The translations under genes were made by a program, and so were the position numbers. A stretch of DNA of 63,075 nt, the filler included, from Octopus bimaculoides (taxonomy: Eukaryota): NCBI RefSeq assembly GCF_001194135.2. It is 7 parts of 6 records of this genome, joined end to end, with 100 filler letters (N's around TTAATTAATTAA, not from the genome) between each part and the next. Parts side by side here need not be neighbours in the genome. Positions count along the whole stretch, not along the records: positions 8,992 to 24,872 come from NC_068986.1; 6 more parts are not named here. One strand, 5' to 3'. Every line of letters begins with the position of its first letter. Within the stretch, counting starts at the first letter, position 1. The notes under the pieces are model-generated. The model ran no database searches and had not been told where the DNA came from. It saw only the letters and a list, made by a program, of their open reading frames with translations. Shown here one piece after another: positions 4,431-24,972 of the stretch.

Positions 4431-6680
4431 TCTTACTCCAGTGAATCATGTGTGTTATGAGCACACATCCCACATAAAGAGAGGAGGTCTTCACTGATGA
4501 TGTATAACAGCAGTTATCAGATAATCATATTTGAATTTGCCAGAACATATAAAGACCAAAGAGACACAATGTTGTTTGTATTCTTGTTGTTCTGTGAGCA
4601 CTCCATAATTTATTATCTTTTTTTGGCAGACATCAGTATGCATCAGCAAAAAATTTGCTTGTGAAGTCTATAGACAAAAGCTCATGCTCTTGTGAAATTT
4701 ACCAGTCTGGGGTAGCTTCGAATGTAGAGACACATATAAAGGTTGAAACACCAAGATGCTTCAGATTTCTCTTACACTGATGAATCACGTGTAATGAAAA
4801 CACATGTGTTTACATGGGGGAGGTGTTCTTTGATGATATAAAACAATAGTGGTCAAATATTCATGTTTGAATTTGTTAGAAGGCATTGAGAAAGAAGACC
4901 TTATTATTCAGATTCTCACTGCTCTGCATGCAATCCTATGAATTATTATCTGTTTGGAAAGCATCAGCACACATCAGCAAATAATCTGTTTGCTGATTCC
5001 TATTTACAAGAATTTGTGTTCATGTGAGGAAATTCACCGGTCCAGGACAGCTTCATCTGAAGAGACACAAAACAAGGTCAAAACACCACAGTGTTTTGAG
5101 GTCCCCTTATCATCATCATCATCATCATCGTTTAACGTCCGCTTTCCATGCTAGCATGGGTTGGACGATTTGACTGAGGACTGGTGAAACCGGATGGCAA
5201 CACCAGGCTCCAGTCTGATTTGGCAGAGTTTCTACAGCTGGATGCCCTTCCTAATGCCAACCACTCAGAGAGTGTAGTGGGTGCTTTTACGTGTCACCCG
5301 CACGAAAACGGCCACGCTCGAAATGGAGTTACTACCTACTCCTTTTCTACATACTGAGCAGGGCCATCTACCTGAAGGGGTTTGTGTTTTATCTACCTTC
5401 CTACTTATTAGGATTTTGGTTTTAGCTANNNNNNNNNNNNNNNNNNNNNNNNNNNNNNNNNNNNNNNNNNNNNNNNNNNNNNNNNNNNNNNNNNNNNNNN
5501 NNNNNNNNNNNNNNNNNNNNNNNNNNNNNNNNNNNNNNNNNNNNNNNNNNNNNNNNNNNNNNNNNNNNNNNNNNNNNNNNNNNNNNNNNNNNNNNNNNNN
5601 NNNNNNNNNNNNNNNNNNNNNNNNNNNNNNNNNNNNNNNNNNNNNNNNNNNNNNNNNNNNNNNNNNNNNNNNNNNNNNNNNNNNNNNNNNNNNNNNNNNN
5701 NNNNNNNNNNNNNNNNNNNNNNNNNNNNNNNNNNNNNNNNNNNNNNNNNNNNNNNNNNNNNNNNNNNNNNNNNNNNNNNNNNNNNNNNNNNNNNNNNNNN
5801 NNNNNNNNNNNNNNNNNNNNNNNNNNNNNNNNNNNNNNNNNNNNNNNNNNNNNNNNNNNNNNNNNNNNNNNNNNNNNNNNNNNNNNNNNNNNNNNNNNNN
5901 NNNNNNNNNNNNNNNNNNNNNNNNNNNNNNNNNNNNNNNNNNNNNNNNNNNNNNNNNNNNNNNNNNNNNNNNNNNNNNNNNNNNNNNNNNNNNNNNNNNN
6001 NNNNNNNNNNNNNNNNNNNNNNNNNNNNNNNNNNNNNNNNNNNNNNNNNNNNNNNNNNNNNNNNNNNNNNNNNNNNNNNNNNNNNNNNNNNNNNNNNNNN
6101 NNNNNNNNNNNNNNNNNNNNNNNNNNNNNNNNNNNNNNNNNNNNNNNNNNNNNNNNNNNNNNNNNNNNNNNNNNNNNNNNNNNNNNNNNNNNNNNNNNNN
6201 NNNNNNNNNNNNNNNNNNNNNNNNNNNNNNNNNNNNNNNNNNNNNNNNNNNNTGATGCTGCTACACCAGTCATTGGGTATGACTCCTTCGTGTATCACCT
6301 GGTTCGTAATATGGGTGACTAGGCTATAGCCAACACTGCCAGATATTTTGAGCATCTCTGCAGTGATTCCTGATGGGCCGGGGGCTTTCCAGGTCTTCAT
6401 ACTCTTAATTGCTTTATCTACCCTGGTACTATCAACTCGGATAGCTGGTCCCTCTATTGGGTCGACATACGGCAGGCTCTCTTTCTCCCATTCATTCTCT
6501 TTGTCAATGAATAATGTGTTATAAACACAACATCATGAAAAAATATTTTCTCCAATAGTAAATAATAACAGTGATCATATATTCATGTTTGAATCTACCA
6601 GAACATATTGAGAATGAATAAATATGTAATTGTTTGGATTCTCTCTATTCCTGCATACACCCTATGAATATTTTAATTTT
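4431..6680 (+). repeat. Three diverged tandem copies of a ~335-340-bp unit, with the copy 2/3 junction split by an RTE insertion
   Basis: Units start at 4431, 4770 and ~5105 (resuming at 6504). Shared motifs include TCATGTTTGAAT, CCAGAACATAT and CCTATGAAT. Confidence 0.7.
5108..6503 (-). mobile_element. RTE-clade LINE, 5'-truncated and internally deleted, spanning an assembly gap
   Basis: KAPGPSGITAEMLKISGSVGYSLVTHITNQVIHEGVIPNDWCSSI at 6400-6252 and LAKTKILISRKVDKTQTPSGRWPCSVCRKGVGSNSI at 5428-5320. The latter joins directly to the GAT-tailed 3' repeat at 5108-5325. Confidence 0.8.
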
Positions 6681-8947: not shown

Positions 8948-10058
8948 NNNNNNNNNNNNNNNNNNNNNNNNNNNNNNNNNNNNNNNNNNNNTTTTTTTTT
9001 TTTTTTTTTTTTTGCTTAATTCAAAAGCAATTTGTTCCTCTGAGAAAACTGTTGAACTCCAATTAGTGTCATCTTTGTGTTGCATCTAGATGATAATGAC
9101 ACTACGTCTTCTGATATGTAGTGCAAATATGACGTCACAAATGTTTATTATTGTTGTTGTTATTTACTCACAGGTCAATTAGTATAAAGGTGACCTATGA
9201 GGAAAAAGATTTCAACTGTAACCGTCCCTTTTATTTTACCTATGTGAGACGGGAACCCAGATCAGCATTTGCACAACATTCGTTAAATTATTGCTTTGTT
9301 ATAGATGTCACTCGGGACTGAGTATACTTATACGCAAAGGCGACTTAACCGTTATAAAATTCGGATGTTTTCCATCCAAAATCACTACGATTAAGTAGTG
9401 ATTTAGGATGGAAAAGTTCTCCTGCCTTATTGAAGACGGCAGGGTGTGACATGTTTTATATTCGTATGTATTTTTAGAGATTTCATTTGTAGGTGGTTTC
9501 AAATTTGAATGTGGTTCAGGGGTACCCCAAACTGCCTTTTAGACAGGGATGAGCAATTTGGAGTTGTATATGTGTTGTTACATGCAACACGTATATATAT
9601 TTGCATTTAATCATTATTGTAGATACATACATACATACATAAACACACAAACATTCACATTCAAACGCACATACANNNNNNNNNNNNNNNNNNNNNNNNN
9701 NNNNNNNNNNNNNNNNNNNNNNNNNNNNNNNNNNNNNNNNNNNNNNNNNNNNNNNNNNNNNNNNNNNNNNNNNNNNNNNNNNNNNNNNNNNNNNNNNNNN
9801 NNNNNNNNNNNNNNNNNNNNNNNNNNNNNNNNNNNNNNNNNNNNNNNNNNNNNNNNNNNNNNNNNNNNNNNNNNNNNNNNNNNNNNNNNNNNNNNNNNNN
9901 NNNNNNNNNNNNNNNNNNNNNNNNNNNNNNNNNNNNNNNNNNNNNNNNNNNNNNNNNNNNNNNNNNNNNNNNNNNNNNNNNNNNNNNNNNNNNNNNNNNN
10001 NNNNNNNNNNNNNNNNNNNNNNNNNNNNNNNNNNNNNNNNNNNNNNNNNNNNNNNNNN

Positions 10059-10093
<35 letters not shown>

Positions 10094-11593
10094 CGTTTGT
10101 GTGTGGTTGTGTGCATGTGTATACGTGCATGAGCGCTCTCGTGTGTATTTGCATGATTTCGCTTTTTCTTGTCCAGAATATGAATGAATACCATACATAG
10201 TCTTTCTTTATTACGTTTGTACAAGATACAGTTTAGGTGGGCGGAGATCATCGTCAATTAAATCTCTTGAGTACTTAAATCGTACTTATTTTATCTTCTG
10301 AAAGAAAAAAATGAAAAATAATCAGCAATGATAGAAATTATATATAACATAGCGTCATAGTCACAAATGTCTGAAGGCGTTTCATTCACTTTAATTGACC
10401 AGATCACTCGAGTGGTACTTGTTTCATTGATCTTCGACGGATGAAAAAAGCTACAAGAATCCTGATTAAAATGTCTGAGAATAAAATTGATATCCAAAAC
10501 AACAATTTCTATATATTTTTGGAACATTACATTATTTTTATCCTTTTAATTTCATTACACTAGATTTCAATAAAATGTTTAAAAAATTTAGTAACATAGC
10601 AGAAAGCTATTCTGAACTTTTACTCAATATCAGTTGAAAAGACAAGTAAGGAGATTTCGTATCAACTTTTCATTTATAGTTTGTGAAGGCGAAAGAGAGA
10701 AATAATGAAAAATATTCCTATACGAAGGCTTGCACTTGAAAAGGGAAACTGAAACCTTTGAAAATTATTCAACTCCTTGTTAGATCTCGACCAAATGATA
10801 ATGAGATAATCCTTTGACGCGACTCTGGACTATGACGTCATAAATGATATTTATTATGTGGTTTTTCCTCAATAATTTATGGGAATATGAAGACATTAAA
10901 AGTCGGGATTCCATTTGACGAACTGGTATTCTTCAGGCACTTCAGATATTTTTCACGCGTTGTGTCTTGGAAAAGCATATTTTCAGCACGCTAAATGCCG
11001 TGTAGTAGAAAAATCTGTAACTCTGATAAAGGAAAAATTGATCTTGTAGGTCCATAATCGAAGGCGACCCATCTGTAAACATTCATTTCTTTCCCAGGTA
11101 AGTAAATCTAGGACTGCATCGTATTCTTCTGTCTTTCCTTCTTCGCCATAGTAGGTACCATGAAGAAGAGATTTCGTAGTTACTAGTTTACAACGATCAC
11201 GCAGAGGCTCCCTAGTTAACTCAGAATCCACAAGTATTTGTTAGAAATGAGCTGCATGAAAGTTAGGAAAGTTAATAAAATTCCTTCTTTAAGGCATAAT
11301 GTGATGGAGATTGGCAGCTATCCTTAACAAGTAGAGCGACCGTTTTCAGGTCCCTTAGTTAGCTGAAAAGCCAGAACTCTTTGGTGAAGGTAAGATAAAG
11401 AAAACTTAGGAATGTTAATGAATTTAACGTGATAACAATATTAAAAATAAACATGGATACTTAAAACGAAAAAACAAACCCCAAACATGGGATTCATTGA
11501 TAAGTGCGTATTTTTCAAGATATAAATACAAACACACTCTCTTGCTTGCCTAAGGTTTTCTACCAAATCTGATTTTCTTTTATTTGTGGCTGC

Positions 11594-11814
11594 AAATTTT
11601 GGTACAGAGCCAGAAGTCTTTTTTTTTTCCTTATTTGAGGTGTGGGGAAATAGATTGCATCAACCCTTGTACTTAATTGCTATTTTATTTTATCGACCCC
11701 GAAAGGATGAAAAGCAAAGTCGACCTCGGAGGAATTTGAACTTAGAACCTAAAGACGGACGAAATGTTGCTAAGCATTTTGTCCACTATGCTAACGGCTT
11801 TGCCAGCTCGCCGC
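11594..11814 (-). mobile_element. tRNA-derived SINE (AAGGCGGCGAGCTGGCAG family)
   Basis: Minus-strand head GCGGCGAGCTGGCAAAGCCGTTAGC and B-box-like GTTCAAATTCC. Related copies at 12250-12460 (+), 32990-33190 (+), 52935-53092 (-) and 53330-53535 (-). Confidence 0.75.
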
Positions 11815-12630
11815 GTTACTGTACCCTATGTATAATGCATTCAGTTTCAGTCATGGACCAAATATGTAACTACTGACTTGGAGATGTCAGTTATAACACT
11901 GTATGGGTGTCTCTTTTTCGGTTCTGCAGGTTGTACAGCGTGTTTCTTTCTTCGTCAGTTTTAGCGGCACCTAACTTCTTACACTCTTAAAATGTTCAAT
12001 GCTAGTCTTCTTTAAAAATATCTTTAATTAGTCTTTGCTTCACACATCTATTTATTCTTTCTTTTTCATTTGGTACTACAACTACGTGTTCCTTATAATG
12101 TGGCCAACACAATATGAGAGACACGAGGCAGATTTGCAGACTGCAAAGTTCGAGCCATCATAACTAATACTTCAATAGTGTGAATGTGATGTTGGTTATA
12201 TTGGCTTAACAGAGGATTTTTATGTGCATAATCCTATCTCACCAAAGTACTTGGCAAAATTGTTACCGCACCAAGCAAAAAATGCTTAGCAGCATTCCGC
12301 TGTTTTTTTTTTACGGTCAGAGGTCAAATTCCGCCGGGATCGACTTTATCTTTCATTCTTTCGGGGTCGTGAAAATAAACACCAATTGTTCACTTGGGTC
12401 GATCTAATCGACTTAAATCCTTCCCTGAAATTTCTGATCTTGTGCCAAAATTTTAAACCATTATCAGAGGCTCCAGTAGTGCATGTTATCAAATTTTAGA
12501 ATAAGAATGAATTAGTTAGGTTTGTCAAATATTCAACGAACTATTTACATTCAATTATTGATGTAGATACATTTACAAAAATGCATACATACGTACATAC
12601 ATACATACATACATACAAACATACATACAT

Positions 12631-13296
12631 TTGTTATCGACCGGCTTGAACTCTCTCAAGAAGAACTTAAATAGAAATTAATGAAAATTCACACATACAT
12701 ACAACAAGGAAACCTCCCTATGCGATTCGATGTTGTTGAAACAAAATACAATGCGATTCGGAAAAAGACTGTCCTGGAATAAATACTGAGAAATCCCCTG
12801 TTATTGAATACATACACAAACATCCACACAAATATTGGTAGCACATTCTCATCAAAACATCTGTCAGGCCGGATATTGTTGTTTGGTAATTTGGTACAGA
12901 CAAGAAACAGTATATACCATCATAGAGGTCAACTCCCCAGCTGATTTGAATATCGTTTTGGAGATCAAGTAAAAGAGGATAACTGACAACTGTTCCGAAT
13001 TCTCCAGTTCTTATATCCAGATTATAAATTCACATTTATAGCAATAATAATTGGTACACTTGGTTTTGTAAGTAAATGCCTAAGTGACAACCTGGATAAG
13101 ATGGGGTTTTCGGAAAAGAAATCAGCCAGCTAATCGCACCTTACAAATACAATCTGTAGTGGGACGGTAAAAATATGCAAGACTTTTCTCAAGTTTAAAA
13201 CGTGACTTTGTTTTTGTTATCTACATTTTTGTATGTTTGTTATAAACCAACTCCTTCCTCAGTGGACGAATTCAAATAATTAGAATCAGAAGAGAA
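12631..13296 (+). mobile_element. R4-clade RLE 3' end between two (CATA)n arrays
   Basis: YNAIRKKDCPG, RPDIVVW and IEVNSPADLNI (PD..E endonuclease motif), then YPDYKFTFIAIIIGTLG. Ends GAAGAGAA|CATACAT, the same junction as the copy ending at 1470. Confidence 0.75.
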
Positions 13297-13370
13297 CATA
13301 CATACATATGTATGTTTACACACACAGATACCCATCGATCCAACAATCCTATCTATCCATTCATCCGTCC

Positions 13371-13371
<1 letters not shown>

Positions 13372-13401
<30 letters not shown>

Positions 13402-13558
13402 CAAACATACATGCATACATACATACATACATACATACATACAAACATACATACATACATAAATACATACATACATACATACAAACATACACACATACAT
13501 ACATACATACATACATACATACATACATACATACATACATACATACATACATACATAC
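13372..13558. repeat. (CATA)n microsatellite; other CATA/CA arrays at 12583-12630, 16078-16160 and 21795-21910
   Basis: Directly visible tetranucleotide repeat. Confidence 0.95.
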
Positions 13559-14089
13559 GTAATGGTAACCGTTGTGGTCAGTCCAATACTCGGACATGTG
13601 TAATTACTGTTCATATGAAGGCAACATACGAAATATTGGAAAAGTTGAGCTACGGAGTGCGGTAAGATTACTTACAAATATTTCTACATACGTGTTTTGA
13701 ACATTACATGTATTGCAGCAATTCTATATACACGATACGTACATCTTAATACATTTATATAAACACAACGCTGTAACATTTACATACATAAAGAAATGTC
13801 AAGTAACTTTTCAAAACAAATCACGAAAAAGAAACACACTACTCCATTTGTACATTTAATGAAATTGTAGAATTAAAAATAACCTGAAAGGAAAAATTAA
13901 TCAAGCTGTGAACAACTTTAAATTTAATTCTGACAAAACTTTATCGAAACTTTTAAAGAAAATCATTGTCTGTTTTGAAAAATAAATACAAATATCAGTG
14001 AATAGACAAAATCATTATGACTAAACGTGTAAGTCTCCTTCAACCTAACAGTGACTACAGTTATTGTATATTATGGGCGTACGACCTTA

Positions 14090-16075
14090 ACAAATATTTA
14101 TATGAAGCATACATATAATCTGACCATAAAAATGTTTGGTTTTATACAAAAGTTAAGAATTTGTGGAACTCCAAACATACAGAATTAGATTTTCCCTCCA
14201 AACATTAAAATGAACAACTAAAACGTATTATCAGATGTAAATTGATACATCTAACAGAAATGTCCGATTTAAAGCAGGCAAGCACTAAAAAGCCTGCCGT
14301 TGAAGATAATCATCCCACTTCAAGGGAAGAACAGATAGAACGGTTAGTTAAAGTTAGCAGTAAACAACACAACCACAATTTAATTGAAATCCATGCCTAT
14401 ACTATACAAACAAGAGGACCAGAAACCTGTGGACGCCTTACAAGTGATCTGGGATGGTATGTTTCAACAGGTCCACAACCTTAATTTGAATGACAGGCCA
14501 TATAACACCAGTATAAGTAAAGAACCCAGTAAATTAGAATTAGAGGCAGTAAACGAAATAACAAACAAATATCTGAAGACCACAGAGTCTAGACGTATGA
14601 ACACAACCTACGCAACCATTAATCTTTTGGTATATGTTTCAGTTGTCACATTACTAGCGTCTCGCAAATAGCTGAAACCACGCAATCGAGATTCAAGCAG
14701 AAAGCCTGAACCAGCATGGGCACGTAACTTAAAAAGTAAAATTTTATTCCTGTGAAAAAGTATTTCACCGATCATTGTAGTTTTGAAATGTAACACAGAG
14801 AACAAATTCACACGGCATCAGAAATACCTCAGAAAAAAAAAAAAAACTAGAGAAGCGATTTGGTGCTGCAGGGTTTAAAAACCTAAACTCCAAACTGCAT
14901 CAGCTAAAAAAATAATTCAGAACTACAGCTGAAAAACTAAAATATAAATCTACAGCATCTAAACGGCAAATGCTCAACAAATTATTTTCCAGAGATCCCG
15001 ATTCAGTTTATCAGTTTCAATGCAAAAGGCTCAATTTCTGTAAAAGACGTCCTGACAAACGATCAGGTTGAGGTCAACTGGAAATCTGTATGGGCAATAA
15101 ATGATGAATTCACCAAACAAGCTGTTCGACTAAAAGAACTGGTGCAGAATTACTATCAGCATAGCTAGCAAAATCAGTATGAAATAGACGACGAAATACT
15201 AAAAACAATTGCAGTGTGGAAGGTGCTTATAAGCCATTTAAAAACACACAAAAACCGTTCGATTCACTTCAACATTTAAATTTAATTTGTCAAAATATTT
15301 TCGTCGCTTTGAGACCGTGACCTGTTCACTGACAAAATTCCGTGCTGAAGTGAATCTAACGGATTTTGTGTGTTTTTAAATGGCTTATAAACACCATCCG
15401 CGCTGCAGTTGTTTTTGTTTCAGCACACGATCTCAGATCAGGTCATTTGCAATACAAGCACATCTCCGTAATACTAAAAACAGTTCTACAGAAAATGTCA
15501 AACAGGAAATCTCCAGTCCAGACCTCATAACCGGTTACTGGCAGAAGTATTTCATCTTTTCATCGGCGAGATCTCATACGACTGTATGGAGAAAGTATCA
15601 AGGGCAGACAAGAACTGTCCCAATCGTCATCAACAGCGACTTCTCTTCTCATTCCCCAAAATAACCAAATTGCACTTGCTAAATTTACCACCCAGTAGTC
15701 TGCCAGAATATCGGAATTGTACAAATTATACACTGAGTGCCCCAAACCGTCCATGCAAGATCATTGTCTCACCAACAACAGCACAACACCTGAGCAAACT
15801 GGAAAAATGTGGGGCTGTATACAGCAGCTACAATTTAACAAAAAGGATCCAGGAAAAAAGTAAAGCATCACAGGAAATTAATAATAGCGTGGTTGGACTA
15901 CCAGAAGGCTTTTGATAATATACAATAAAGTTAGCTTATCAGGACCTGTTCTTGAACGCATGACCAAAAGTTGGTACACCACTTGGGTGTGATAAGAAAC
16001 AAATTGAGTCGGATAGCATTCACTACCCAAAAAGCTATCTTTCAGCGTGACGGTCTGTTGTTGCCCTTCGTCCAC
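14090..16075 (+). mobile_element. Decayed R4-clade element, N-terminal region and RT domains, 3'-truncated into (CATA)n
   Basis: PAWARNLKSKI, QVEVNWKSVW, MQDHCLTNN, GKMWGCIQQL, KLIIAWLDYQKAFDNI and KAIFQRDGL (GIFQGD motif) in shifting frames. Confidence 0.7.
15195..15421. mobile_element. Near-palindromic MITE-like insertion with ~76-bp arms inside the R4 element
   Basis: 15195-15271 is an imperfect reverse complement of 15346-15421 (core TAAGCCATTTAAAA.ACACA...GATTCACTTCA). Confidence 0.7.
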
Positions 16076-16268
16076 TCGTACATACATGCATGCACACGTA
16101 CATACATACATACATATATACATACATACATACATACATACATACATGCGTACATGCATGCAAATCACAGCCGTCATTTAAGTGAGAATAACACAGTGTG
16201 TACCATGGTTTCGCTAACTGTTTAAGATGCCTATATAGTTGCAGGCAAACTCAGGCACCCACATGATA

Positions 16269-16307
<39 letters not shown>

Positions 16308-17089
16308 ATCCTCTCTGTGTGACTGTACTTACATGTATTTGTCTATAGTCTGTTGACTCTAATCCAGTATGTGTATATCGTACATAATATCGATTTATTA
16401 CATTTGAAGAAGACCAGTTTTAGTTGGGCTGAAGTCATCTTCAATTAAATCCACTTGAGTATTTGAATCGTACTTATTTCATCTTCTGTCAAAGAAACAG
16501 AACATATAAAAACAACCAGCAATAATAGAGATTATTTATATAGTCTTGTAACCAGAAATTTTTCAAGGAATGTTTATTTGCTATAATCGACCAAACTACT
16601 CGAGTGATGCTTACTTTATTGATCTCGAACGGATGAAAAAAATTACAGACATCTTGATTAAATGTCTTAGAAGATGAATGATGTCCAAACAACAATTTCT
16701 AAGTATTTTTGGAGAATTCAATATTTTTTTCTCTTTTAATTTTGTTTTCTCATTCGAGTTCAATAAAATTTGAACAAAATGTATTAAGATAGTTGAAATC
16801 TAATCTGAAAAATTTACTTACTCAGCAGGACTTTTGCGAAGATAGCTGAATATCAGTTTAAAAGGCATGAATGTGTTTCCAATGTACTTCGTTGATAATT
16901 TAGGAATATACTGTAGTATGCAGAAGAGCAGGAAATAACTTAAGAGATTTCTGTACGAGGGTTTGCATTTCAAACAAGGAATTGGAAGCTATTTACTTCT
17001 TCGTTAGCACTGCAAATAAATGAGATACTTCCTGTAACGACACTCTGAAGTATGATGTCAGGAATGATATTCATCGTCTGGATTTTTCT

Positions 17090-17760
17090 AATAACTGATA
17101 ACAAAGCCAAATCTTATCCATGGAAGTGAAGACGTTACAGAGTCGAGTTTTCACTTGTACTGTTATTCTTCAAAAACTTCTGATATTACGTTCGTATTAG
17201 GTATCGTATACCATATAGATTCATAACGTTGGTAGAGTGTCTGTGCTGTTTAATACTTAGCCCCGCATCAGTCTTGGTCTGGCAGTCCACTGAAAGAAGG
17301 CAACGTAACGGTGATCATCAGTGTACCTAAAACTATATCAGAATCCTATACGGCCATCCTTCTTCAGTACCGTAAGTCTCCTGAGGGAGATTTCACTGCT
17401 ACTTCTAACATACCGAACGAATAGTGGAGGTTTCCTTCGTTAACTTGACGGCCACAAATGCTCCTTAGAGACGAGCTGAATAAAAGTCCGGAGAGTTAAT
17501 GAATTTGAAGAGCGGAAATAAAAGCTGACAAGGATCTCTTGCCCCAAGGAACATCGGAAATGATATTTAACACAATGACAAAATACAAAACTATAAGTCG
17601 GTATTTAAAATAAAGAAACACTGATAATAGAGAGAATAAAACTACACTAACAGCCCAGAATGGAATAGCAACAAGTTCATAACATCGCACTTTGAAGGCT
17701 GCTCCATGAAATCCAGGAGCTATAAATCGTCAATTATAACATTCTTTGAAGGAATATCGG
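17090..17760 (-). pseudogene. Speculative decayed transmembrane-TIR (Toll-like) receptor C-terminal region within block B
   Basis: One minus frame with several stops reads Cys-containing segment, hydrophobic LVAIPFWAVSVVLFSLLSVFL, YFKYRLIVLY, GKRSLSAFIS, and later D*CGAKY*TAQ. Motifs are not confirmed in the paralogous blocks. Confidence 0.25.
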
Positions 17761-18199
17761 CTAGTGACAAAAGGACAATTTAATCCGAGATATACTAAAG
17801 AAATATACCTTTGATAATAGATCTGTTCAATGGAAACTAATCTTAAAATGAATAACATTTGTCATTCTGTCTCTTACGGATAGTTTTATAAGTTATGAGA
17901 ACTTTGTGATAATATAAAACATTTTAACATTTCAAAGTCGGTGTTCCTTGCTCTACACNNNNNNNNNNNNNNNNNNNNNNNNNNNNNNNNNNNNNNNNNN
18001 NNNNNNNNNNNNNNNNNNNNNNNNNNNNNNNNNNNNNNNNNNNNNNNNNNNNNNNNNNNNNNNNNNNNNNNCACACACACACACACACACACAACATACA
18101 CACACACACACACACACACACAACATACACACACATACAATACACATACACAAATAACACACACTTTGCTTAAGGTTGCCTATATATGACTACGATCAT

Positions 18200-18700
18200 C
18201 ATTATTTTTGATATCTGGAACTTCTGGTAACTGAACATTACAATCCGAATAGCTTCGGTCGTAGACAGGACATATAAATGGTAGCATAGGGAGATCAAGT
18301 GTGATACTGTATGAATAATATAATCATGCCTATTTTCTCGCTTTTCTGAGTGTATATTTTCTTCCTTTTCTTCGGTATTCTTTGAACACTGAGACTGACG
18401 AATTAAGTGACGCTTAGTGATGCTCTTTCTCTCTTGAAGTCTTAGTGCTGCGCCTCTTTAAAATAATCTTTAGTTGAATTTGATTCCCTTCTTATATCTT
18501 GCAGTTAATTGTTTGTCATAGTGTAACTGTCCGTAGAAAATTTTACACGTGAGACTCGAATTTGATATGGGTAATGCATGTCCAAGCCATCTCAGTTTGA
18601 TGTCTGTATAGTGTGGTTTCAGAGTGTGGTGGAGAATTTCTCCGTTCCTGGGTTCCGTGGAGAAGGGAGGTAACTCTTTGTAAAGTAACGTTCAGAAATT
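18200..18700 (-). mobile_element. Decayed RTE (BovB-like) 3' end
   Basis: Minus-strand IKLRWLGHALP...KIFYGQLHYDKQ...RYKKGIK, followed by a terminal zinc-knuckle-like remnant. Confidence 0.6.
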
Positions 18701-18818
18701 GTTTGTCTCCCTTTCATCCATTGATCATAAAAAAAAAGAAATATTGCTTTTAATATTTGATTCACGTCTTTGAAAGTTTTTAAAAATATTTATTTCCGGT
18801 TTTCTAGCGTCAGTGACA

Positions 18819-20568
18819 TCTATATCTTTCTATCTATATCTCTCTATCCATCTCCCTCTATCTATCTCTATCTCTCCATATCTCTCTATCCATCTCTTTC
18901 TTTGTATCTTTCTCTCACTTAGTATCTATTTGTCTATATCTTATCTATCTATCTCATTTGTCTAACTAGCTACCTCTCTCTCTCCCTCTCTCTATATCTC
19001 ACTCACTCTCTTGTTTTCACTTTCATTTTTCAGACGCTATTGTTTTCACTTTAAGTTCAATCGCTATTGTTTTCACTGTGAGTTTTCAATCGCTATTTAC
19101 AAACAACAACGACAAATTACTGACAAAAAGAAGTTCACAATTACTGATGAAAGTAATTTCATACATAATTTATTGACAGAAGTAACTTCATAAATTTCAC
19201 TTCAATCTGTACACTTCGTTAAATTTGCCTATAAATTTCTTATTTACTTTTGCAACGTTTTGTGTTTTTTGTTGTTGGCGGAATTACTGATAAAAGTAAG
19301 TTCATAATTTACTGTCAGATGTAACTTTAAAAAATTTCACTAAAATCCGTACATTTAGTTAATTTCCCTAAAAATCTCCTATTTACTTTTGAAACGGTTT
19401 TGCGTTTTTCTGTAGTTAACGGCTTTTTTCTGGTTCCTTCGATACTGGCCCTTTGATTCACTGACAAATTTCGCTTCAACCTGTACAATTCTTTATTTTC
19501 CGTAAAAAATTTCTTATTTACTTTCTGTCCATCGTACTAAAAAATATAATTTCTGTTACCAAGTTATTTTCATTGTTTACTATATTCTGCACCCGTGTGT
19601 ATCATGCTTAGAAGGGAAGTGTCAAACCTGTCTACAATGTCAAGGTTAGCTAAAAGAATGTCTCTGTATCTTTCTCTGGCTTAGTATTTATAACCAGGCT
19701 TAGAAGGGAAGTGTCAAATCTGTCTACAATGACAAGGTTAGCCAAAAGAATGTGTTTGTCCAGGGAAAGAGAGACAGCTGCAGAAAGGGAAGCATACCAA
19801 GAAACTAACAGAATGTGCACTACAAAAGCCAGAGCATCTCAAAGTGATTAACAGAGGTATGCACGGCTGACAAGGAACGAAGAGCATTTGCAACACCTCA
19901 GAGAAGCAACTTCTATGAAGCAGCTTTCAATTATGATCCAGCAGTTTATTATGCAGATGACAATAGTGTTTCCATTAGTGCAATGATAACTGCGTGCATA
20001 CATTGTAAAGCAAGGAAGTGGCCTGAAGAGACACCTGCACTGTGCTGCAGTGGTGGAAAGGTTAAACTCCCTGCAGTCACCCAACCTCCAGAGCCATTGA
20101 AGAAACTATTGTCATCAACTGACCAAGATTCCAAGCACTTCCAAAAAAAATTAGACAATACAACGCTGCACTAGAGATTACATCATTTGGAGCCACAAGA
20201 GATTTAATTGGATTCATGCAAACTTTCAAGATCAAAGGTCAGATTTATCATCGGATTGGCTCTCTACTACCACTGTCAAAATGAATCACCAAAATCGGCC
20301 TTTAATTGTATATAATCTGTATTTGTTTTTGATTATGAAATAAGCTGCACAAAACGTGTTTTTGAATTACTTTATATACATATATGAGTTGAAAACTTTC
20401 TTTTAACATTGCACGTTACGTTTATGTTCCATGCTGGATGGATTGGAGAGTTATTAATCTAGAAAGTTGGTAACCCAGCTACTAGCAGTTGAGACCTGCG
20501 TAATCTAGATGGCATTTTAAAATTTCATTATCCTCTTTAACCAGGGCAACGCCGGGTATTTCTGCTAC
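18819..20568 (+). mobile_element. Helitron, internally deleted, retaining the Rep N-terminal fragment (~19920-20280)
   Basis: CIHCKARKWPEETPALCCSGGKVKLP...PPEPLKKLL...ITSFGA...TFKIKGQIYHRIGSLLP. 5' end A|TC; 3' end CCAGGGCAACGCCGGG hairpin plus TATTTCTGCTAC|T (CTAG mutated). Confidence 0.85.
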
Positions 20569-20960
20569 TGTCTATATATTTCATATGAATTTGATCAGCT
20601 TTTCTATACAATTTTTCATTGTAAAATTTTGTAGTTATTGCTTCAGCCCATCGAATGTTGAAATTTTACGCAAATTTGCATTTTTACTCGCTCCAATGTG
20701 TAGATGGATATGTTACGAAACTCTGAAATGAAAATTGATTAATCTGTCAAAATTTCAGAACACAGGAAGTCAATACTATGTAATTAGATATAATGTAGAA
20801 AACTTGAGCTTAATGTATACAATGGGAGTTCCATATTACGAGACTTATGTTCACAATAGATACAATTTCTATATTTCGTAAGAAGGATACTCGGTCAGTG
20901 GCGTAGCAAGGGTGAGTGGATGCGAAGGAACGGTCTACTTTGGGCGACTCTTTTAGTTAA

Positions 20961-21136
20961 ACCTTGCATTCATATAGATTTGTAAAATTAAAGATTCATT
21001 ATTATTCTCATTACATACGGGATCGTCACTTTTTGGTCTTCTATATAAGCCTGTATAAGCTTGGCAGCTGGCGGGTAAAAGTGACAGCAAATTGAACGGC
21101 TGTCCCAGGCGGCTCATACTGTAACTACATATCCTT

Positions 21137-21176
<40 letters not shown>

Positions 21177-21488
21177 CTACGTCACAGTATCCAGTTTTCA
21201 AGCACCGTAATTTTGTAGAAGATATAACAACTGTTACGTTAACCAAGGCAGACTCCTGTCATAGTCGCTGTCTGATTCGTCTTACACTCCTTTAATAACA
21301 GAGTTGTTAATTAAACTGTTACTTTCTGTGTCTCGCTGAGATAATAAAATTCCATCTCATTGAAGTTAACAGCGTGAAATCCCTTTAGTACTAGAAGCGA
21401 ATTGCAAGTTACTAAGAACTCATGGGATGCATATGTAATGAAAATAATAATGAATCTCTAATTCTACAAATCTACATGAATGTAACGT
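20961..21488. mobile_element. MITE-like element with ~62-bp terminal inverted repeats and an internal (GT)n
   Basis: CATTCATATAGATTTGTAAAATTAAAGATTCATTATTATTCTCATTACATA (from 20967) is an imperfect reverse complement of 21432-21482. Confidence 0.65.
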
Positions 21489-21828
21489 ATATTGAATTAT
21501 TGCTGAGGTATTGGAGGTCACCCGCGGCCAATCAGACATATGATTAAAAGCGATCCAAATGTGATTGTAGTTATTCCATTATAGTACACAGCAACAACTA
21601 CGTAACTAACCCCCGTGGGTATGTTGTGATACGTTGGAGATTTTTCTTTCGTATAGATTTTTGGAGACGTTCTCAACAAGCGACTTCAACCTTTAACACG
21701 AGAAGGTACAAGTTGGGATTGTTAAACTTTCAAAGATCTATTCCCATTCAACACATATTTGCATGAACTTTTTAATGTAGATACGTGTACGCTCATACAT
21801 ACATACATACATACATACATACATACAA

Positions 21829-21885
<57 letters not shown>

Positions 21886-22064
21886 TACACACATACACAC
21901 ACACACACATATCGATCCCTCGATTCATTCATCCATCTATAAAAAATACATAAATTATTACTTACATACCAACATAGATATATAAACATATATACATACA
22001 CACACACACCAAACATAAATCCTTTAGTGTGTGTGCGTGTATGTGTGCGCGCGTGTATGCGTGC

Positions 22065-22105
<41 letters not shown>

Positions 22106-22198
22106 CATTTACACGTATTTGTCTATGTTGTCTTTTGACCAGAATATTGTGAATATGGTGCACAATATTGATTTATTGCATCGATACAAGACCACAGT

Positions 22199-22386
22199 AT
22201 TAAGGCGGCGAGCTGGCAGAAACGTTAGCACGCCAGACGAAATGCTTACGTTCTGAGTTCAAATTCCACCGAGGTTGACTTTGCCTTTCATCCTTTCAGG
22301 GTCGATAAATTAAGTACCAGTTGCGTACTGGGTCGATCTAATCGACTGGCCCCCAAATTTCGGGCCTTGTGCCTAGAGTAGAAAAG
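22199..22386 (+). mobile_element. tRNA-derived SINE with a 16-bp target-site duplication
   Basis: A box TGGCAGAAACGTTAG and B box GTTCAAATTCC. TSD GATACAAGACCACAGT (22183-22198) / GATACAAGTCCACAGT (22387-22402). Confidence 0.85.
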
Positions 22387-24169
22387 GATACAAGTCCACA
22401 GTTTAGGTGGGCGGAGGTCATTGTCGCCAATCTAATCAATTCTCCTATTTGAACCATACTTATCTTATCTTTTGCGGAAGAAATATAACAGAAAAACAGA
22501 GAAGCAATAATTAAAAATTATTTATAATATAGCTTAAAGGCTACAGATATTTTGAAGGATGGTTCATTCGCTTAAGGCGACCAATCTACTTGTGTAGTAC
22601 TTATTTTATTGATCTCGAACGGATGAAAATATTATAAAAATATTGATTAAATATCTCAGAATATGATTCTTGTCTAAATGGCAATTTCTATGTATTCTTA
22701 GTGCATTACATTATATGAATCTCCTATTTAATTCCTTTTATTACAGTTCAATAAAACGTTAACAAAACCTATTTTCTTCATTTACCAAACAAGACCTTTT
22801 CAAATATAACTTACTGTCAATTGAAAAGGCATGCGTGTGCTTCGTATCGACTTCATTGCGAGTTTGTGTGTATAGGAAACAACAGTGCAGGAAATATTTG
22901 AATTAACATACGCACAATGTCTTGTATTTCAAAGTAATCGGCGCCGTTGGAAGCCATTTAATTCCTTGTTAGTATCACTGCCAAATGTTGATGGAATACG
23001 TCTGGAGGCGAAATATTGAGTAAATTATGAAGTCATAAATGATATTTATTGATGGAATGTTTTTTAGCAATGACTAACTTAATTCTTCGCTATAGAATCT
23101 TCTCTACAGAAATATAAACAGTACAGAGTTGGGCTTTCTCAACATGTAAAAATATTCTTCAGATCTTTGAGATACTTGCTTCTCGCATTGTCTAATAAAA
23201 AGTCTTTATCCAGTATGCGAATACTGCACATTATTTTGATCACAAATTAGGTACATCTTGTAGTAGCTGTTGTTTTTAACTCTAGGTCAATCATTAGGGA
23301 GCTGAGCGCTGATCAAAGGTGGTGCGACTGTGACCATCCTTCTTGTTTCCAAGTTAATATACATTGGGTTATATTACTATTCAAGTTAGTATATTTAGAA
23401 CTACAACCTATGTGTCTTTTTTTATGACGTCAGAGTGTGGTAAGAATGGGATTTCTAGCAGTAGACCACGCAACCGTGTTAGGGTTTCATCGCTAGTTCA
23501 AAGACTTCGAGTGTTTGGTGGAGGTAAATATTCCTGGTTTTTATTGTCATTAATTTTCATAACTATACCAGAAAAATGAAAAACAAACAATATTGTTTTG
23601 TTTCATAGATAACAGGATACATGATTATAGAGATGCTAGTCGTTTAACCAAACATCAGTACTTGACTAGAAATTGTTGGGAAATTATGAGAACATGTTAT
23701 TTTTTTGCATTATATGACTCACTGGAGTATAATTTCTACATAAGATATACCATACATTTTTTAAATGATTTTATCAGAATTCAATAAAATGGTGTCCAAT
23801 AGAACAGTAAGTACACTTAGCCGGTTTACATTTATTCTGAAGAATTATATCCTACTTACATAAGAATAATAACAAGTCCCTTAAAAATCTGATTCAGTAT
23901 CAGTTGAAAAGCAAGCAAGCATTACAGCTCATATCACCAACTCTAATCCCTTTCTTTTATGACAATCAAAACGCCTTTCTTTAAAGACCATTTCCACTCC
24001 AGATCTTTCCTTTGTTACTTCTTTCTGTTGCTCTTCAGAGAGATTTAGTGTAGACGGTGTTGTTAAATTCAACATCGACATATCATCTGAATGAATTTAG
24101 TACACCAGTTTCCCAACAAAACAATTCACCAAGTGTTTCTATCCGTCTTTCATCTGTTGGATCGACTGT

Positions 24170-24660
24170 CTCCAGTTAGATTGCACGATCCGTACTGATG
24201 GAACACTGCCTGATCAACATTCTATCTAGTCTAATGCGTCCGAGATTCGGTTTACTCTCTCAATACTCACACTCCTCTTTCTTCGCGTGTATCAACAACC
24301 TACCTACTTGCCGTTACGTCTAACAACGTTTGAATAGGCATGGACGTCTAACAATGTCCATGCCTATGCAGACGATGCCACCATTCATTATTTCCAAACC
24401 TTCCGTGCTCAAGCGTCATTCACATGAAACCTGAATAGCACACAACAAATTTACACTAACTCAATGAACGGATATTTTGAAAACGAACTCCAAATAAGTC
24501 TTGTTTGCGCTTGCATCACAAAACTACTCCTCTCAAGGTAACAATGTCGTACCCTTCCCTAATGAATATGAACAACATGTAAATTGAAGTCGTAAGGTTG
24601 TTACAAAAGCAAAGACTCACCACCATTGAGGATCTCTTCTGTCGAACGTACGTTAGCAAA
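24170..24660 (+). mobile_element. Decayed CR1/Jockey-group RT fragment
   Basis: VRTDGTL...SILTLLF...NNVHAYADDAT (YADD motif at ~24364-24378). Confidence 0.6.
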
Positions 24661-24711
24661 AGAACCTCTCTCTCTCTGTCACATTCACTCACTCTCTCTC
24701 TTTCTCTCTTA

Positions 24712-24731
24712 CTACTACAACAACAACAACA

Positions 24732-24780
<49 letters not shown>

Positions 24781-24808
24781 TTACTACTACTATTACTACT
24801 ACTACTAT
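24712..24808. repeat. (TAC/CAA)n microsatellite; further compound TAA/CAT/GTA tracts at 25537-25645, 26017-26183, 27740-27880, 29975-30060 and 34378-34455
   Basis: Directly visible. Confidence 0.95.
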
Positions 24809-24972
24809 AATGTCCTTTGCTCCCATGAACTGACTGGTTTTGTGCTGCTTTCCCTTTGGCACTTCCGACTTCNNNNNNNNNNNNNNNNNNNNNNNNNNNN
24901 NNNNNNNNNNNNNNNNTTAATTAATTAANNNNNNNNNNNNNNNNNNNNNNNNNNNNNNNNNNNNNNNNNNNN

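What the first reader, a model, noticed from the sequence alone, without database searches (positions are those of the whole stretch)
9075..24170. Five-copy ancient tandem block of unknown function under the transposon layer
Seen: blocks E, A, B, C and D share collinear motifs at roughly 65-75% identity by eye. These include a GC box (GGTGGGCGGAG), an embedded degraded SINE fragment at the same position, AATAAA, a CRE palindrome (TGACGTCA at 9130, 10833 and 23425) and donor-like GTAGGT/GTAAGT near 11153 and 17372. Later insertions (R4, Helitron, RTE, SINE with TSD) differ between units, so the duplication predates them. Inference: the relic of a tandem gene cluster or a duplicated promoter/first-exon module. 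This is the largest structure in the window that TE calls do not explain.
Basis: partly seen in the sequence, partly recalled or inferred. Interest (0 to 1): 0.7.

Follow-up and report, generated by a model that had tools for sequence, protein, structure and literature searches.

The report
Decayed tandem duplication in octopus junk DNA
This is an old, non-coding tandem duplication (three full and two partial copies of a ~1.7-2 kb unit) in an Octopus genome that was later stretched by transposon insertions; it evolves at the same rate as the dead transposons around it, so it looks like ordinary decaying DNA rather than a gene or promoter cluster.

Summary

- **Copies:** three direct copies of a ~1.2 kb body are solid (A 10114-11282, B 16307-17506, C 22106-23350), at 60-73% pairwise identity. 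E (9019-9675) is a degraded copy lacking its 5' half. D (23761-23912) is a 150-bp fragment.
- **Period:** the ancestral period was about 1.7-2 kb, not 6 kb. Units join tail-(ATAC)n(AC)n-spacer-(GT)n-head, and the 6 kb spacings come from later insertions.
- **Insertions:** SINEs (one with a 16-bp target-site duplication), two R4-like fragments and an RT-bearing relic inside the (ACAT)n tract, an RTE-like relic, and a Helitron relic.
- **Orthologue:** I recovered the orthologous locus from Octopus vulgaris (L011, ~93% identical, no gaps). It bridges both assembly gaps collinearly and shows no further copies in the flanks.
- **No constraint:** between species the units are 0.932 identical, against 0.923 for dead TE relics and 0.933 for other DNA.
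- **No function signal:** no shared ORF, no protein homologue, no Rfam family and no conserved RNA fold.
- **Open point:** genome-wide copy number could not be tested.

Verdict: a neutrally decaying local tandem duplication of low interest.

The parts
9019..9675 (+). Unit E. A partial copy: body positions ~662-1140 of the unit profile (9019-9448), tail motif 9597-9622 and (ATAC)n from 9623. The 5' half is absent.
   Evidence: Collinear nhmmer hits score above all 100 composition-matched random controls. The tail aligns to the A and B tails. The O. vulgaris left flank (L011 1-2030) has no unit sequence.
9623..10113 (+). E->A junction: (ATAC)n/AC-rich tract, assembly gap 9676-10058, then (GT)n 10059-10113.
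   Evidence: The flanks match the left and right halves of the intact B->C junction. The orthologue bridges the gap with 364 bp, including a tRNA-like SINE head.
10114..11282 (+). Unit A body. It contains two SINE-core relics (10253-10317 and ~10395-10460, minus orientation), the GC box at 10236, TTCAATAAA at 10566 and TGACGTCA at 10833.
   Evidence: blastn and MAFFT alignments to B and C. SINE alignment. Motif searches.
11283..12630 (+). A post-body and insertions: a local 143-bp duplication (11205-11282 / 11348-11425), SINE 11641-11818 (-), SINE 12311-12457 (+), 'A tail' 12489-12583 and (CATA)n 12584-12630.
   Evidence: Segment 11934-12629 has no counterpart in O. vulgaris.
12631..13294 (+). 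Two tandem 5'-truncated 3' fragments of an RLE-type (R4/Dong-like) non-LTR element: a 50-bp remnant at 12631-12680 and a larger fragment at 12685-13294. Each ends in a homologous 3'UTR abutting (ACAT)n.
   Evidence: The RPDIVV...IIEV...IIIGTLG motifs were seen by inspection. A longer copy in O. vulgaris carries a CCHC-like region. There is no Pfam or PDB support.
13295..13558 (+). A piece of the ancestral A->B junction (ATCGATCC...CATTCATCC spacer motif) plus (TACA)n at 13372-13558.
   Evidence: 13296-13520 aligns to the B->C junction at 21801-22020.
13559..16078 (+). RT-bearing non-LTR relic lying between two (TACA)n tracts. It contains a 216-bp palindrome at 15201-15416.
   Evidence: RT motifs AWLDYQKAFD...FQRDGLLLPF with a marginal RVT_1 hit at E=0.05. 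An 85%-identical O. vulgaris annotated protein, P0035. Inverted repeat I8.
16079..16306 (+). The rest of the A->B junction: (TACA)n 16079-16159, a spacer, and (TG)n 16269-16306.
16307..17506 (+). Unit B body.
   Evidence: Aligns to A over ~1.3 kb and to C over ~0.8 kb.
17507..21685 (.). TE-rich filler between the B body and the B tail. It holds gap 2 (17959-18071), (CA)n 18072-18164, an RTE-like relic (-) at ~18165-18800, a TC-rich tract, a 139-bp tandem at 19139-19560, a Helitron N-terminal relic (+) at 19848-20340, and an element with 60-bp inverted ends at 20958-21491.
   Evidence: Helitron: 34 homologues carrying PF14214/PF05970. The RTE-like call rests on the LRWLGH motif only. Repeats. 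Inverted ends. Gap 2 is bridged by ~76 bp in the orthologue.
21686..22105 (+). B tail (21686-21796) and the intact B->C junction: (ATAC)n(AC)n 21797-21909, spacer 21910-22026 and (GT)n 22027-22105. The (AC)n and (GT)n tracts form a long imperfect inverted repeat.
   Evidence: The single-stranded DNA fold has z = -6.6.
22106..23350 (+). Unit C body, interrupted by a younger SINE at 22199-22386 that is flanked by a 16-bp target-site duplication (22183-22198 / 22387-22402).
23761..23912 (+). Fragment D, covering unit profile positions 439-565 only.
   Evidence: nhmmer score 13.8 against a control maximum of -3.0. The anchors TTCAATAAAATG, TATTCTGAA and TATCAGTTGAAAAG are collinear. No further extension was found.

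Best explanation
This is a neutrally decaying local tandem duplication, a low-copy macrosatellite-like array.

**Unit.** A stretch of ordinary non-coding DNA of about 1.7-2 kb, already carrying SINE debris and bounded by microsatellites, was duplicated head-to-tail several times.

**How it formed (inferred).** The most likely route is unequal exchange or replication slippage anchored in the (ACAT)n/(AC)n...(GT)n tracts that form every unit junction.

**What it produced.** The array reads E(partial)-A-B-C-D(fragment).

**What happened since.** The copies have drifted apart to 27-40% divergence. The region between one unit's body and the next unit's head, including the (ACAT)n tract (which took two R4-like fragments and the RT relic), absorbed most of the later TE insertions. 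That inflated two periods to ~6 kb.

**Status of each step.** The copies, the junction architecture, the order of events and the lack of constraint are shown. The formation mechanism and the absence of function are inferred.
For: - **Array structure.** Five same-orientation, collinear copies share a repeated tail-microsatellite-head junction.
- **Bounded array.** The O. vulgaris orthologue shows no unit sequence in the 2 kb to the left or the 3 kb to the right, and the end copies are partial.
- **Patchwork unit.** The unit contains two SINE-core relics, as expected for duplicated genomic DNA rather than a TE consensus.
- **Later insertions.** These include a SINE with a target-site duplication at a site that is empty in A and B, a Helitron relic, and non-LTR fragments flanked on both sides by (ACAT)n.
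- **No constraint.** Orthologous identity is 0.932 for units (n=3879), 0.923 for TE relics (n=4299) and 0.933 for other DNA; p = 0.14 and 0.37. Motifs are lost between species.
- **No function signal.** No ORF, no protein homologue, no Rfam family, no tRNA and no conserved RNA fold.
- **The locus still makes local copies.** O. vulgaris has a 157-bp patch 98% identical to its own unit B, flanked by microhomology, and an extra junction+head copy.
- **Age.** Pairwise JC distances of 0.38-0.46 between units compare with 0.07 between species. The array is therefore about 5-6 times older than the species split.
Against: - Genome-wide copy number of the unit was not measurable with the tools at hand, so a dispersed family is not excluded.
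- Unit B's core is somewhat better conserved between species (0.961) than the average. The R4-like relic (0.956) and a 139-bp tandem (0.956) are just as high.
- The 'A tail' segment is absent from the O. vulgaris orthologue, so the A->B junction reconstruction rests on one species.
- The proposed microsatellite-anchored unequal exchange is inferred from the junction architecture, not demonstrated.
- Absence of function cannot be proven from sequence alone.
Confidence: 0.65

Rival explanations
1. The unit is itself a mobile element. For example, it could be a non-autonomous retroelement ending in (ATAC)n that is mobilised by a microsatellite-specific LINE. Under this reading the array arose by repeated insertion into the tail microsatellite of earlier copies, and the family is dispersed through the genome.
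For: - Each unit ends in a conserved tail motif followed by (ATAC)n.
- RLE-type non-LTR fragments at this locus demonstrably sit in tandem inside (ACAT)n.
- Microsatellite-specific LINEs that build such arrays are known (PMC3812793).
- Dong-R4 is among the most active octopus LINE groups (PMC13282606).
- The three full copies are roughly equidistant from one another, which also fits a burst.
Against: - A, B and C all start at the same point, just after (GT)n, rather than showing variable 5' truncation.
- The unit tail has no similarity to the R4-like 3'UTR.
- There are no target-site duplications, terminal inverted repeats or coding remnants.
- The unit embeds SINE debris.
- None of the ~4.6 kb of DNA found only in the O. 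vulgaris copy of this locus is a full new unit copy; it holds only the 157-bp B-like patch.
- Two partial copies at the array ends fit unequal exchange.
Confidence: 0.2
2. The units are functional modules. They would be tandem promoters or first exons, enhancers (GC box plus CRE), or a cluster of non-coding RNA genes.
For: - TGACGTCA occurs three times against 0.19 expected by chance.
- The GC box is exact in A and C in both species.
- TTCAATAAA is shared by four copies.
- Unit B's core is slightly more conserved than average.
Against: - Two of the three CREs are the same ancestral site, and the third is out of register.
- B and C have mutated CRE sites. In O. vulgaris the CRE in E, the 23425 CRE, AATAAA in A and the donor in B are all lost.
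- There is no shared ORF or codon periodicity and no protein homologue.
- Rfam hits are only sub-threshold, driven by microsatellites or a hairpin. Consensus folds are weak with no covariation.
- Divergence between species is indistinguishable from that of dead TEs.
- The only annotated O. vulgaris gene here is a two-exon model made of TE relics, with unit B in its intron.
Confidence: 0.05
3. The array is an assembly artefact, meaning a mis-joined or artificially duplicated repeat around the two N gaps.
For: Two gaps of estimated length lie inside the region, and both abut dinucleotide repeats.
Against: - The copies differ by 27-40%, so they cannot be duplicated reads.
- An independent gap-free chromosome-level assembly of another species has the same order and orientation of all units and bridges both gaps.
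Confidence: 0.02

Closest known systems
Macrosatellites and low-copy kb-scale tandem duplications (for example human D4Z4 and DXZ4; cited from my own knowledge)
   Same: A kb-scale unit repeated head-to-tail in one orientation, with partial units at the array ends. Local exchange between units continues, as the 157-bp patch 98% identical to unit B in O. vulgaris shows.
   Different: There are only three full and two partial copies. The copies are 27-40% diverged with no homogenisation. There is no embedded gene (D4Z4 carries DUX4). The array is heavily interrupted by TEs and evolves at the neutral rate.
Microsatellite-specific non-LTR retrotransposons: Waldo in (ACAY)n, Mino in (AC)n, Dong in (TAA)n (PMC3812793); Dong-R4 in Octopus (PMC13282606)
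   Same: The fragments inserted at the A->B junction are 5'-truncated, arranged in tandem, and each abuts (ACAT)n at its 3' end. This explains why the (ACAT)n tract of the A->B junction took several insertions.
   Different: This describes the insertions, not the duplicated unit. The clade assignment rests on motif inspection only, and genome-wide target specificity was not tested.
TE-borne tandem arrays, for example satellite-like repeats carried by Helentron/HINE elements in oysters (cited from my own knowledge)
   Same: Tandem repeats associated with TE debris and microsatellites in a mollusc genome.
   Different: Here the unit is about ten times longer. No Helitron termini bound the array, and the Helitron relic is a later insertion inside one period.
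   Same: Same-orientation tandem modules spaced a few kb apart.
   Different: There is no ORF, no conserved splice donor, no conserved promoter motifs and no constraint between species.

Membership tests
Low-copy tandem duplication / macrosatellite-like array | Head-to-tail copies in one orientation with the same junction between successive units | tested here: met
   The tail-(ATAC)n(AC)n-spacer-(GT)n-head junction is intact at B->C, is seen on both sides of gap 1 at E->A, and is reconstructible at A->B.
Low-copy tandem duplication / macrosatellite-like array | A bounded array with partial units at its ends | tested here: met
   E lacks profile positions 1-660 and D covers only 439-565. There is no unit sequence in the orthologue's 2 kb left flank or 3 kb right flank.
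Low-copy tandem duplication / macrosatellite-like array | Sequence homogenisation among units (concerted evolution), typical of active macrosatellites | tested here: not met
   Pairwise JC distances are 0.38-0.46. The only sign of recent exchange is the 157-bp patch in O. vulgaris. I therefore call it a decayed array.
   The protein-collection proxy failed its positive control: SINE ORFs also gave zero hits. The metagenome pattern scan gave only chance hits. Contigs of Helitron homologues were not from an octopus. Only the orthologous locus was retrievable.
   No TIR, LTR or TSD flanks the units. A, B and C share a common 5' start. No protein similarity was found in any frame.
Tandem gene cluster or promoter/first-exon module | A reading frame or exon conserved among units, or homology to a protein | tested here: not met
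   The longest jointly open frame is 46 codons, there is no periodicity, and indels are mostly not multiples of three. There were no hits among 5.8 billion proteins.
Tandem gene cluster or promoter/first-exon module | Purifying selection: slower divergence between species than in neutral DNA, and maintained motifs | tested here: not met
   Identity is 0.932 for units, 0.923 for TE relics and 0.933 for other DNA. CRE, AATAAA and donor motifs are lost in O. vulgaris.
Tandem gene cluster or promoter/first-exon module | Transcription or open chromatin phased with the units | not testable with these tools
   No expression or chromatin data were available. The only annotated O. vulgaris model here is TE-derived, and unit B is intronic in it.
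Non-coding RNA gene array | A match to a known RNA family, or a conserved secondary structure with covariation | tested here: not met
   Rfam gave only sub-threshold hits driven by microsatellites or a hairpin. No tRNAs were found. RNAalifold gave about -18 to -20 kcal/mol over 460 columns with a covariation term near zero.
R4/Dong-type microsatellite-specific non-LTR element (applies to the insertions at 12631-13294) | A restriction-like endonuclease domain and R4-clade reverse transcriptase | tested here: inconclusive
   CCHC-like and RPD...(I/V)IE...K-type motifs are visible by eye. Pfam, PDB and the large-collection search gave no hit for these fragments.
R4/Dong-type microsatellite-specific non-LTR element (applies to the insertions at 12631-13294) | A 3' end abutting the target microsatellite, with tandem 5'-truncated copies | tested here: met
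   Two fragments have homologous 3'UTRs, and each is followed by (ACAT)n.

The most novel reading that the evidence does not exclude
The array could be a lineage-specific regulatory or small-RNA-producing macrosatellite. A subset of units (notably A, with an intact GC box and CRE in both species, and the better-conserved core of B) would still act as promoter or enhancer modules. The hairpin-forming (AC)n...(GT)n junctions would serve as programmed landing pads for an undescribed (ACAT)n-specific R4/Dong lineage.
Probability: 0.05. Interest if true: 0.45.

Novelty: new member of a known kind. Interest (0 to 1): 0.12.

Why it matters
It matters little in itself. It is one more decayed tandem duplication in a genome that is about two-thirds repeats (PMC13282606).

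Three modest points are worth keeping:
- **Annotation.** The largest structure in this window that the TE calls left unexplained is explained without invoking a gene. The overlapping O. vulgaris 'hypothetical protein' model is stitched from TE relics.
- **A worked example.** The locus shows microsatellite junctions acting both as the seams of a tandem duplication and as repeated insertion sites for retrotransposons. Comparison of two species shows that local copying is still going on.
- **Method.** A two-species neutral-rate comparison against in-situ dead TEs was enough to dismiss motif-based promoter speculation.

Tried and rejected
1. **Pfam on X-masked six-frame translations and stitched TE fragments.** The only result was a marginal RVT_1 hit.
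2. **Protein collection as a copy-number proxy.** The unit fragments gave zero hits. The positive control using ORFs from the abundant SINE also gave zero, so I rejected the proxy as uninformative.
3. **Exact look-up of a window ORF.** It was not on record.
4. **Metagenome scan with a two-anchor unit pattern.** It returned seven chance matches in AT-rich contigs with no similarity beyond the anchors.
5. **Contigs of the Helitron homologues P0004 and P0005.** They share only the Helitron segment and carry no SINE, so they are not from an octopus.
6. **PDB sequence search for the R4-like C-terminus.** No relevant hit.
7. **Rfam.** The mir-297, MIR841 and similar hits are all far below gathering scores. 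They lie on (TACA)n tracts or on the 15201-15416 palindrome, so I rejected them as artefacts.
8. **The 23425 CRE as part of block D.** I rejected this because the flanking similarity is at shuffle level and the site is absent in O. vulgaris.
9. **The ~6 kb spacing as the true period.** I rejected this because only ~1.2 kb of each period aligns, and E->A is ~1.7 kb.

Full report
**What is in the sequence.** Self-comparison of the piece (8992-24872) shows a direct repeat with start-to-start spacings of about 6190 and 5990 bp. Gapped alignment gives three solid copies of a ~1.2 kb body on the + strand:
- A: 10114-11282
- B: 16307-17506
- C: 22106-23350

Each copy is preceded by a (GT)n tract at 10059, 16269 and 22027. 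Pairwise identity is 60-83% in 100-column windows over the first ~800 bp, 50-63% up to about A 11256, and at background level after that. The remaining ~4.5 kb of each 6 kb period does not align between periods.

**The two weak copies.** A profile built from A/B/C finds two more matches.
- E matches collinearly at 9019-9155, 9161-9235 and ~9334-9448. The first two scored 7.7 and -0.3, against a best of -3.9 in 100 composition-matched (first-order Markov) random sequences.
- D matches only at 23761-23912. It scored 13.8, against a control best of -3.0.

The five-block observation therefore holds, but only three blocks are substantial.

**The true period and the junction.** E->A is ~1.7 kb and C->D is ~1.0 kb, so the 6 kb spacing cannot be ancestral. 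A conserved tail motif (...TATTTGCAT...ATGTAGATAC followed by (ATAC)n) occurs at 9597-9640, 12540-12630 and 21750-21830.

The B->C junction is uninterrupted and reads:
- tail, 21686-21796
- (ATAC)n(AC)n, 21797-21909
- spacer, 21910-22026
- (GT)n, 22027-22105
- head of C

The (AC)n and (GT)n tracts form a long imperfect inverted repeat. Folded as single-stranded DNA it gives z = -6.6. Gap 1's flanks align with the left and right halves of this junction. The ancestral unit was therefore about 1.7-2 kb, and the A->B and B->C periods were inflated by later insertions.

**What was inserted.**
- **SINEs.** Younger SINE copies sit at 11641-11818 (-), 12311-12457 (+) and 22199-22386 (+). The last has a 16-bp target-site duplication (GATACAAGACCACAGT / GATACAAGTCCACAGT), and A and B show the empty site.
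- **Helitron.** 19848-20340 (+) is a Helitron N-terminal relic. It has 34 homologues with E-values from 1e-34 to 1e-5, most of them carrying PF14214 and/or PF05970, and one is from the cuttlefish Acanthosepion pharaonis.
- **R4-like fragments.** 12631-13294 holds two tandem 5'-truncated 3' fragments of an RLE-type non-LTR element. Each has a homologous 3'UTR abutting (ACAT)n.
- **RT relic.** 13559-16078 is an RT-bearing relic lying between two (TACA)n tracts. It gives a marginal RVT_1 hit (E=0.05) and has an 85%-identical annotated O. vulgaris protein.
- **RTE-like relic.** ~18165-18800 (-) carries a non-LTR RT C-terminal motif, seen by inspection only.

They rest on motifs, however. Pfam, PDB and the large protein collection gave nothing for these fragments. 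Non-LTR elements that target microsatellites are well documented, for example Waldo in (ACAY)n, Mino in (AC)n and Dong in (TAA)n (PMC3812793). That fits the clustering of insertions in the (ACAT)n tract.

**The unit itself.** Its best-conserved core contains two relics of the same SINE-core segment in minus orientation (A 10253-10317 and ~10395-10460, with counterparts in B and C). It also shows that the unit is a patchwork of ordinary genomic DNA that already carried TE debris when it was duplicated.

**Tests of the gene / promoter / RNA reading.**
- Across A, B and C the longest jointly open frame is 46 codons. Substitutions show no 3-base periodicity, and most indels are not multiples of three.
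- A composite of all stop-free fragments of at least 35 residues from the three bodies found no homologue among 5.8 billion proteins.
- Rfam gave only far-sub-threshold hits on microsatellites and one palindrome. No tRNAs were found.
- Consensus RNA folds of the core on either strand are weak, with no covariation.
- TGACGTCA is enriched (3 observed against 0.19 expected). However, 9130 and 10833 are the same ancestral site, B and C carry TGATGTCA and TGAAGTCA there, and 23425 is out of register.

**The orthologue.** An exhaustive phmmer search with the intact 95-residue fragment at 14384-14668 returned an Octopus vulgaris protein, CAI9724530.1. Looking up the contig that encodes it returned 26.2 kb of O. 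vulgaris chromosome OX597819.1 as locus L011. L011 2030-23147 is collinear with window 8994-24870 at about 93% identity and contains no N. The window therefore comes from an Octopus species about 7% diverged from O. vulgaris.

This comparison settles several points.
1. **Gaps.** Both assembly gaps are bridged collinearly, by 364 bp for gap 1 (estimated at 383 N) and ~76 bp for gap 2 (estimated at 113 N).
2. **Array limits.** The array is bounded. No unit sequence occurs in the 2 kb to the left or the 3 kb to the right, and E's 5' half is missing.
3. **Shared history.** All the units and the major insertions examined here (R4-like fragment, RT relic, SINEs at 11641 and in C, RTE-like and Helitron relics) have O. 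vulgaris orthologues, so they predate the split; the window segment 11934-12629 (with SINE 12311-12457 and the A tail) has none.
4. **Constraint.** Orthologous identity is 0.932 for unit bodies (n=3879), 0.923 for dead TE relics (n=4299) and 0.933 for other non-unit DNA (n=2932). The differences are not significant (p = 0.14 and 0.37). The units evolve neutrally.
5. **Motifs.** In O. vulgaris the CRE in E is TCACGTCA, the 23425 CRE is gone, AATAAA in A is AATAAC, and the donor in B is GCAAGT.
6. **The annotated gene.** The O. vulgaris model is two exons, both within TE relics, with unit B in its intron.

**Ongoing local copying.** O. vulgaris carries a 157-bp patch next to D that is 98% identical to its own unit B and is flanked by CTGGAGTATA microhomology. 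It also has an extra junction-spacer+(GT)n+head copy (L011 18813-19119) that is 85% identical to the one before C. The two species also differ by a replacement at window 11934-12629. The locus therefore keeps producing and losing local copies, which supports a local recombinational origin.

**Age (rough inference).** JC distances between units are 0.38-0.46 on the best 800 bp, against 0.07 between species. The O. vulgaris calibration has JC-to-consensus 0.09 at about 25 My and 0.2 at about 56 My (PMC13282606). On that scale the units separated roughly 50-65 My ago and the species about 10 My ago.

**What remains open.**
- The protein-collection proxy failed its positive control.
- The metagenome scan gave only chance hits.
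- The only octopus DNA I could fetch was the orthologous locus.

The structural evidence argues for a local duplication, at about 0.65: a common 5' start, no termini or target-site duplications, embedded SINE debris, partial end units and local patch copying. I leave about 0.2 for a TE-type origin.

**Verdict.** This is a real but ordinary feature: a neutrally decaying, TE-bloated tandem duplication of non-coding DNA. Interest is low.

Noticed in passing
window 12631-13294; L011 6754-9029: Two tandem 5'-truncated 3' fragments of an RLE-type (R4/Dong-like) non-LTR element. Each has a homologous 3'UTR directly abutting (ACAT)n. The first is 1.1 kb in O. vulgaris but only a 50-bp remnant in the window. 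This suggests an (ACAT)n-associated LINE lineage in Octopus. The classification rests on motifs only.
   Followed up: partly
L011 10001-16207 (window ~14393-14716 and 18373-18414): The O. vulgaris 'hypothetical predicted protein' CAI9724530.1 is a two-exon model. Both exons lie in retrotransposon relics, and unit B lies in its intron. It is probably a TE-derived annotation artefact.
   Followed up: yes
L011 21877-22033 (between window 23704 and 23706): A 157-bp patch present only in O. vulgaris. It is 98% identical to that species' own unit B (L011 13250-13406) and is flanked by CTGGAGTATA microhomology. It looks like a recent ectopic templated copy between array members.
   Followed up: partly
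L011 18813-19119 vs 19867-20157; window 20958-21491: O. vulgaris has an extra junction-spacer+(GT)n+head fragment, 85% identical to the one before C. It lies inside an element bounded by 60-bp inverted repeats. At the equivalent place the window keeps only a (GT)n tract (21141-21174).
   Followed up: partly
L011 ~4619-4700 (DNA corresponding to window gap 9676-10058): The sequence bridging gap 1 in O. vulgaris contains a tRNA-like head with A-box-like and B-box-like motifs. ARAGORN does not call it as a tRNA. It is probably another SINE family inserted in the E->A junction.
   Followed up: no
window 11934-12629 vs L011 6754-7825: A replacement-type difference between the species. The window segment carrying a SINE, the 'A tail' and (CATA)n has no counterpart in O. 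vulgaris, which has R4-like coding DNA there instead. Which state is ancestral is not known.
   Followed up: partly
window 15201-15416: A 216-bp palindrome (83-nt arms, 86% complementary) inside the RT relic. It causes the sub-threshold MIR841 Rfam hit. O. vulgaris has a ~420-bp insertion at its centre (L011 10883-11303) that is 75% similar to another insertion specific to that species (L011 7874-8360).
   Followed up: partly
window 19139-19760: About three copies of a 139-bp tandem repeat and a 92-bp-spaced duplicated segment (91% identical) lie immediately upstream of the Helitron N-terminal relic. They may be part of that Helitron.
   Followed up: no
window 11205-11282 / 11348-11425: A local 143-bp-spaced duplication (68% identical) in the 3' part of unit A, with a weak match to B 17382-17506.
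   Followed up: no
L011 717-1032: A 317-bp near-perfect palindrome (91% self-complementary) about 1 kb to the left of the array in O. vulgaris, outside the window piece.
   Followed up: no
window 24666-24807: (CT)n followed by a 33-copy (TAC)n microsatellite at the right end of the piece, conserved in position in O. vulgaris.
   Followed up: no
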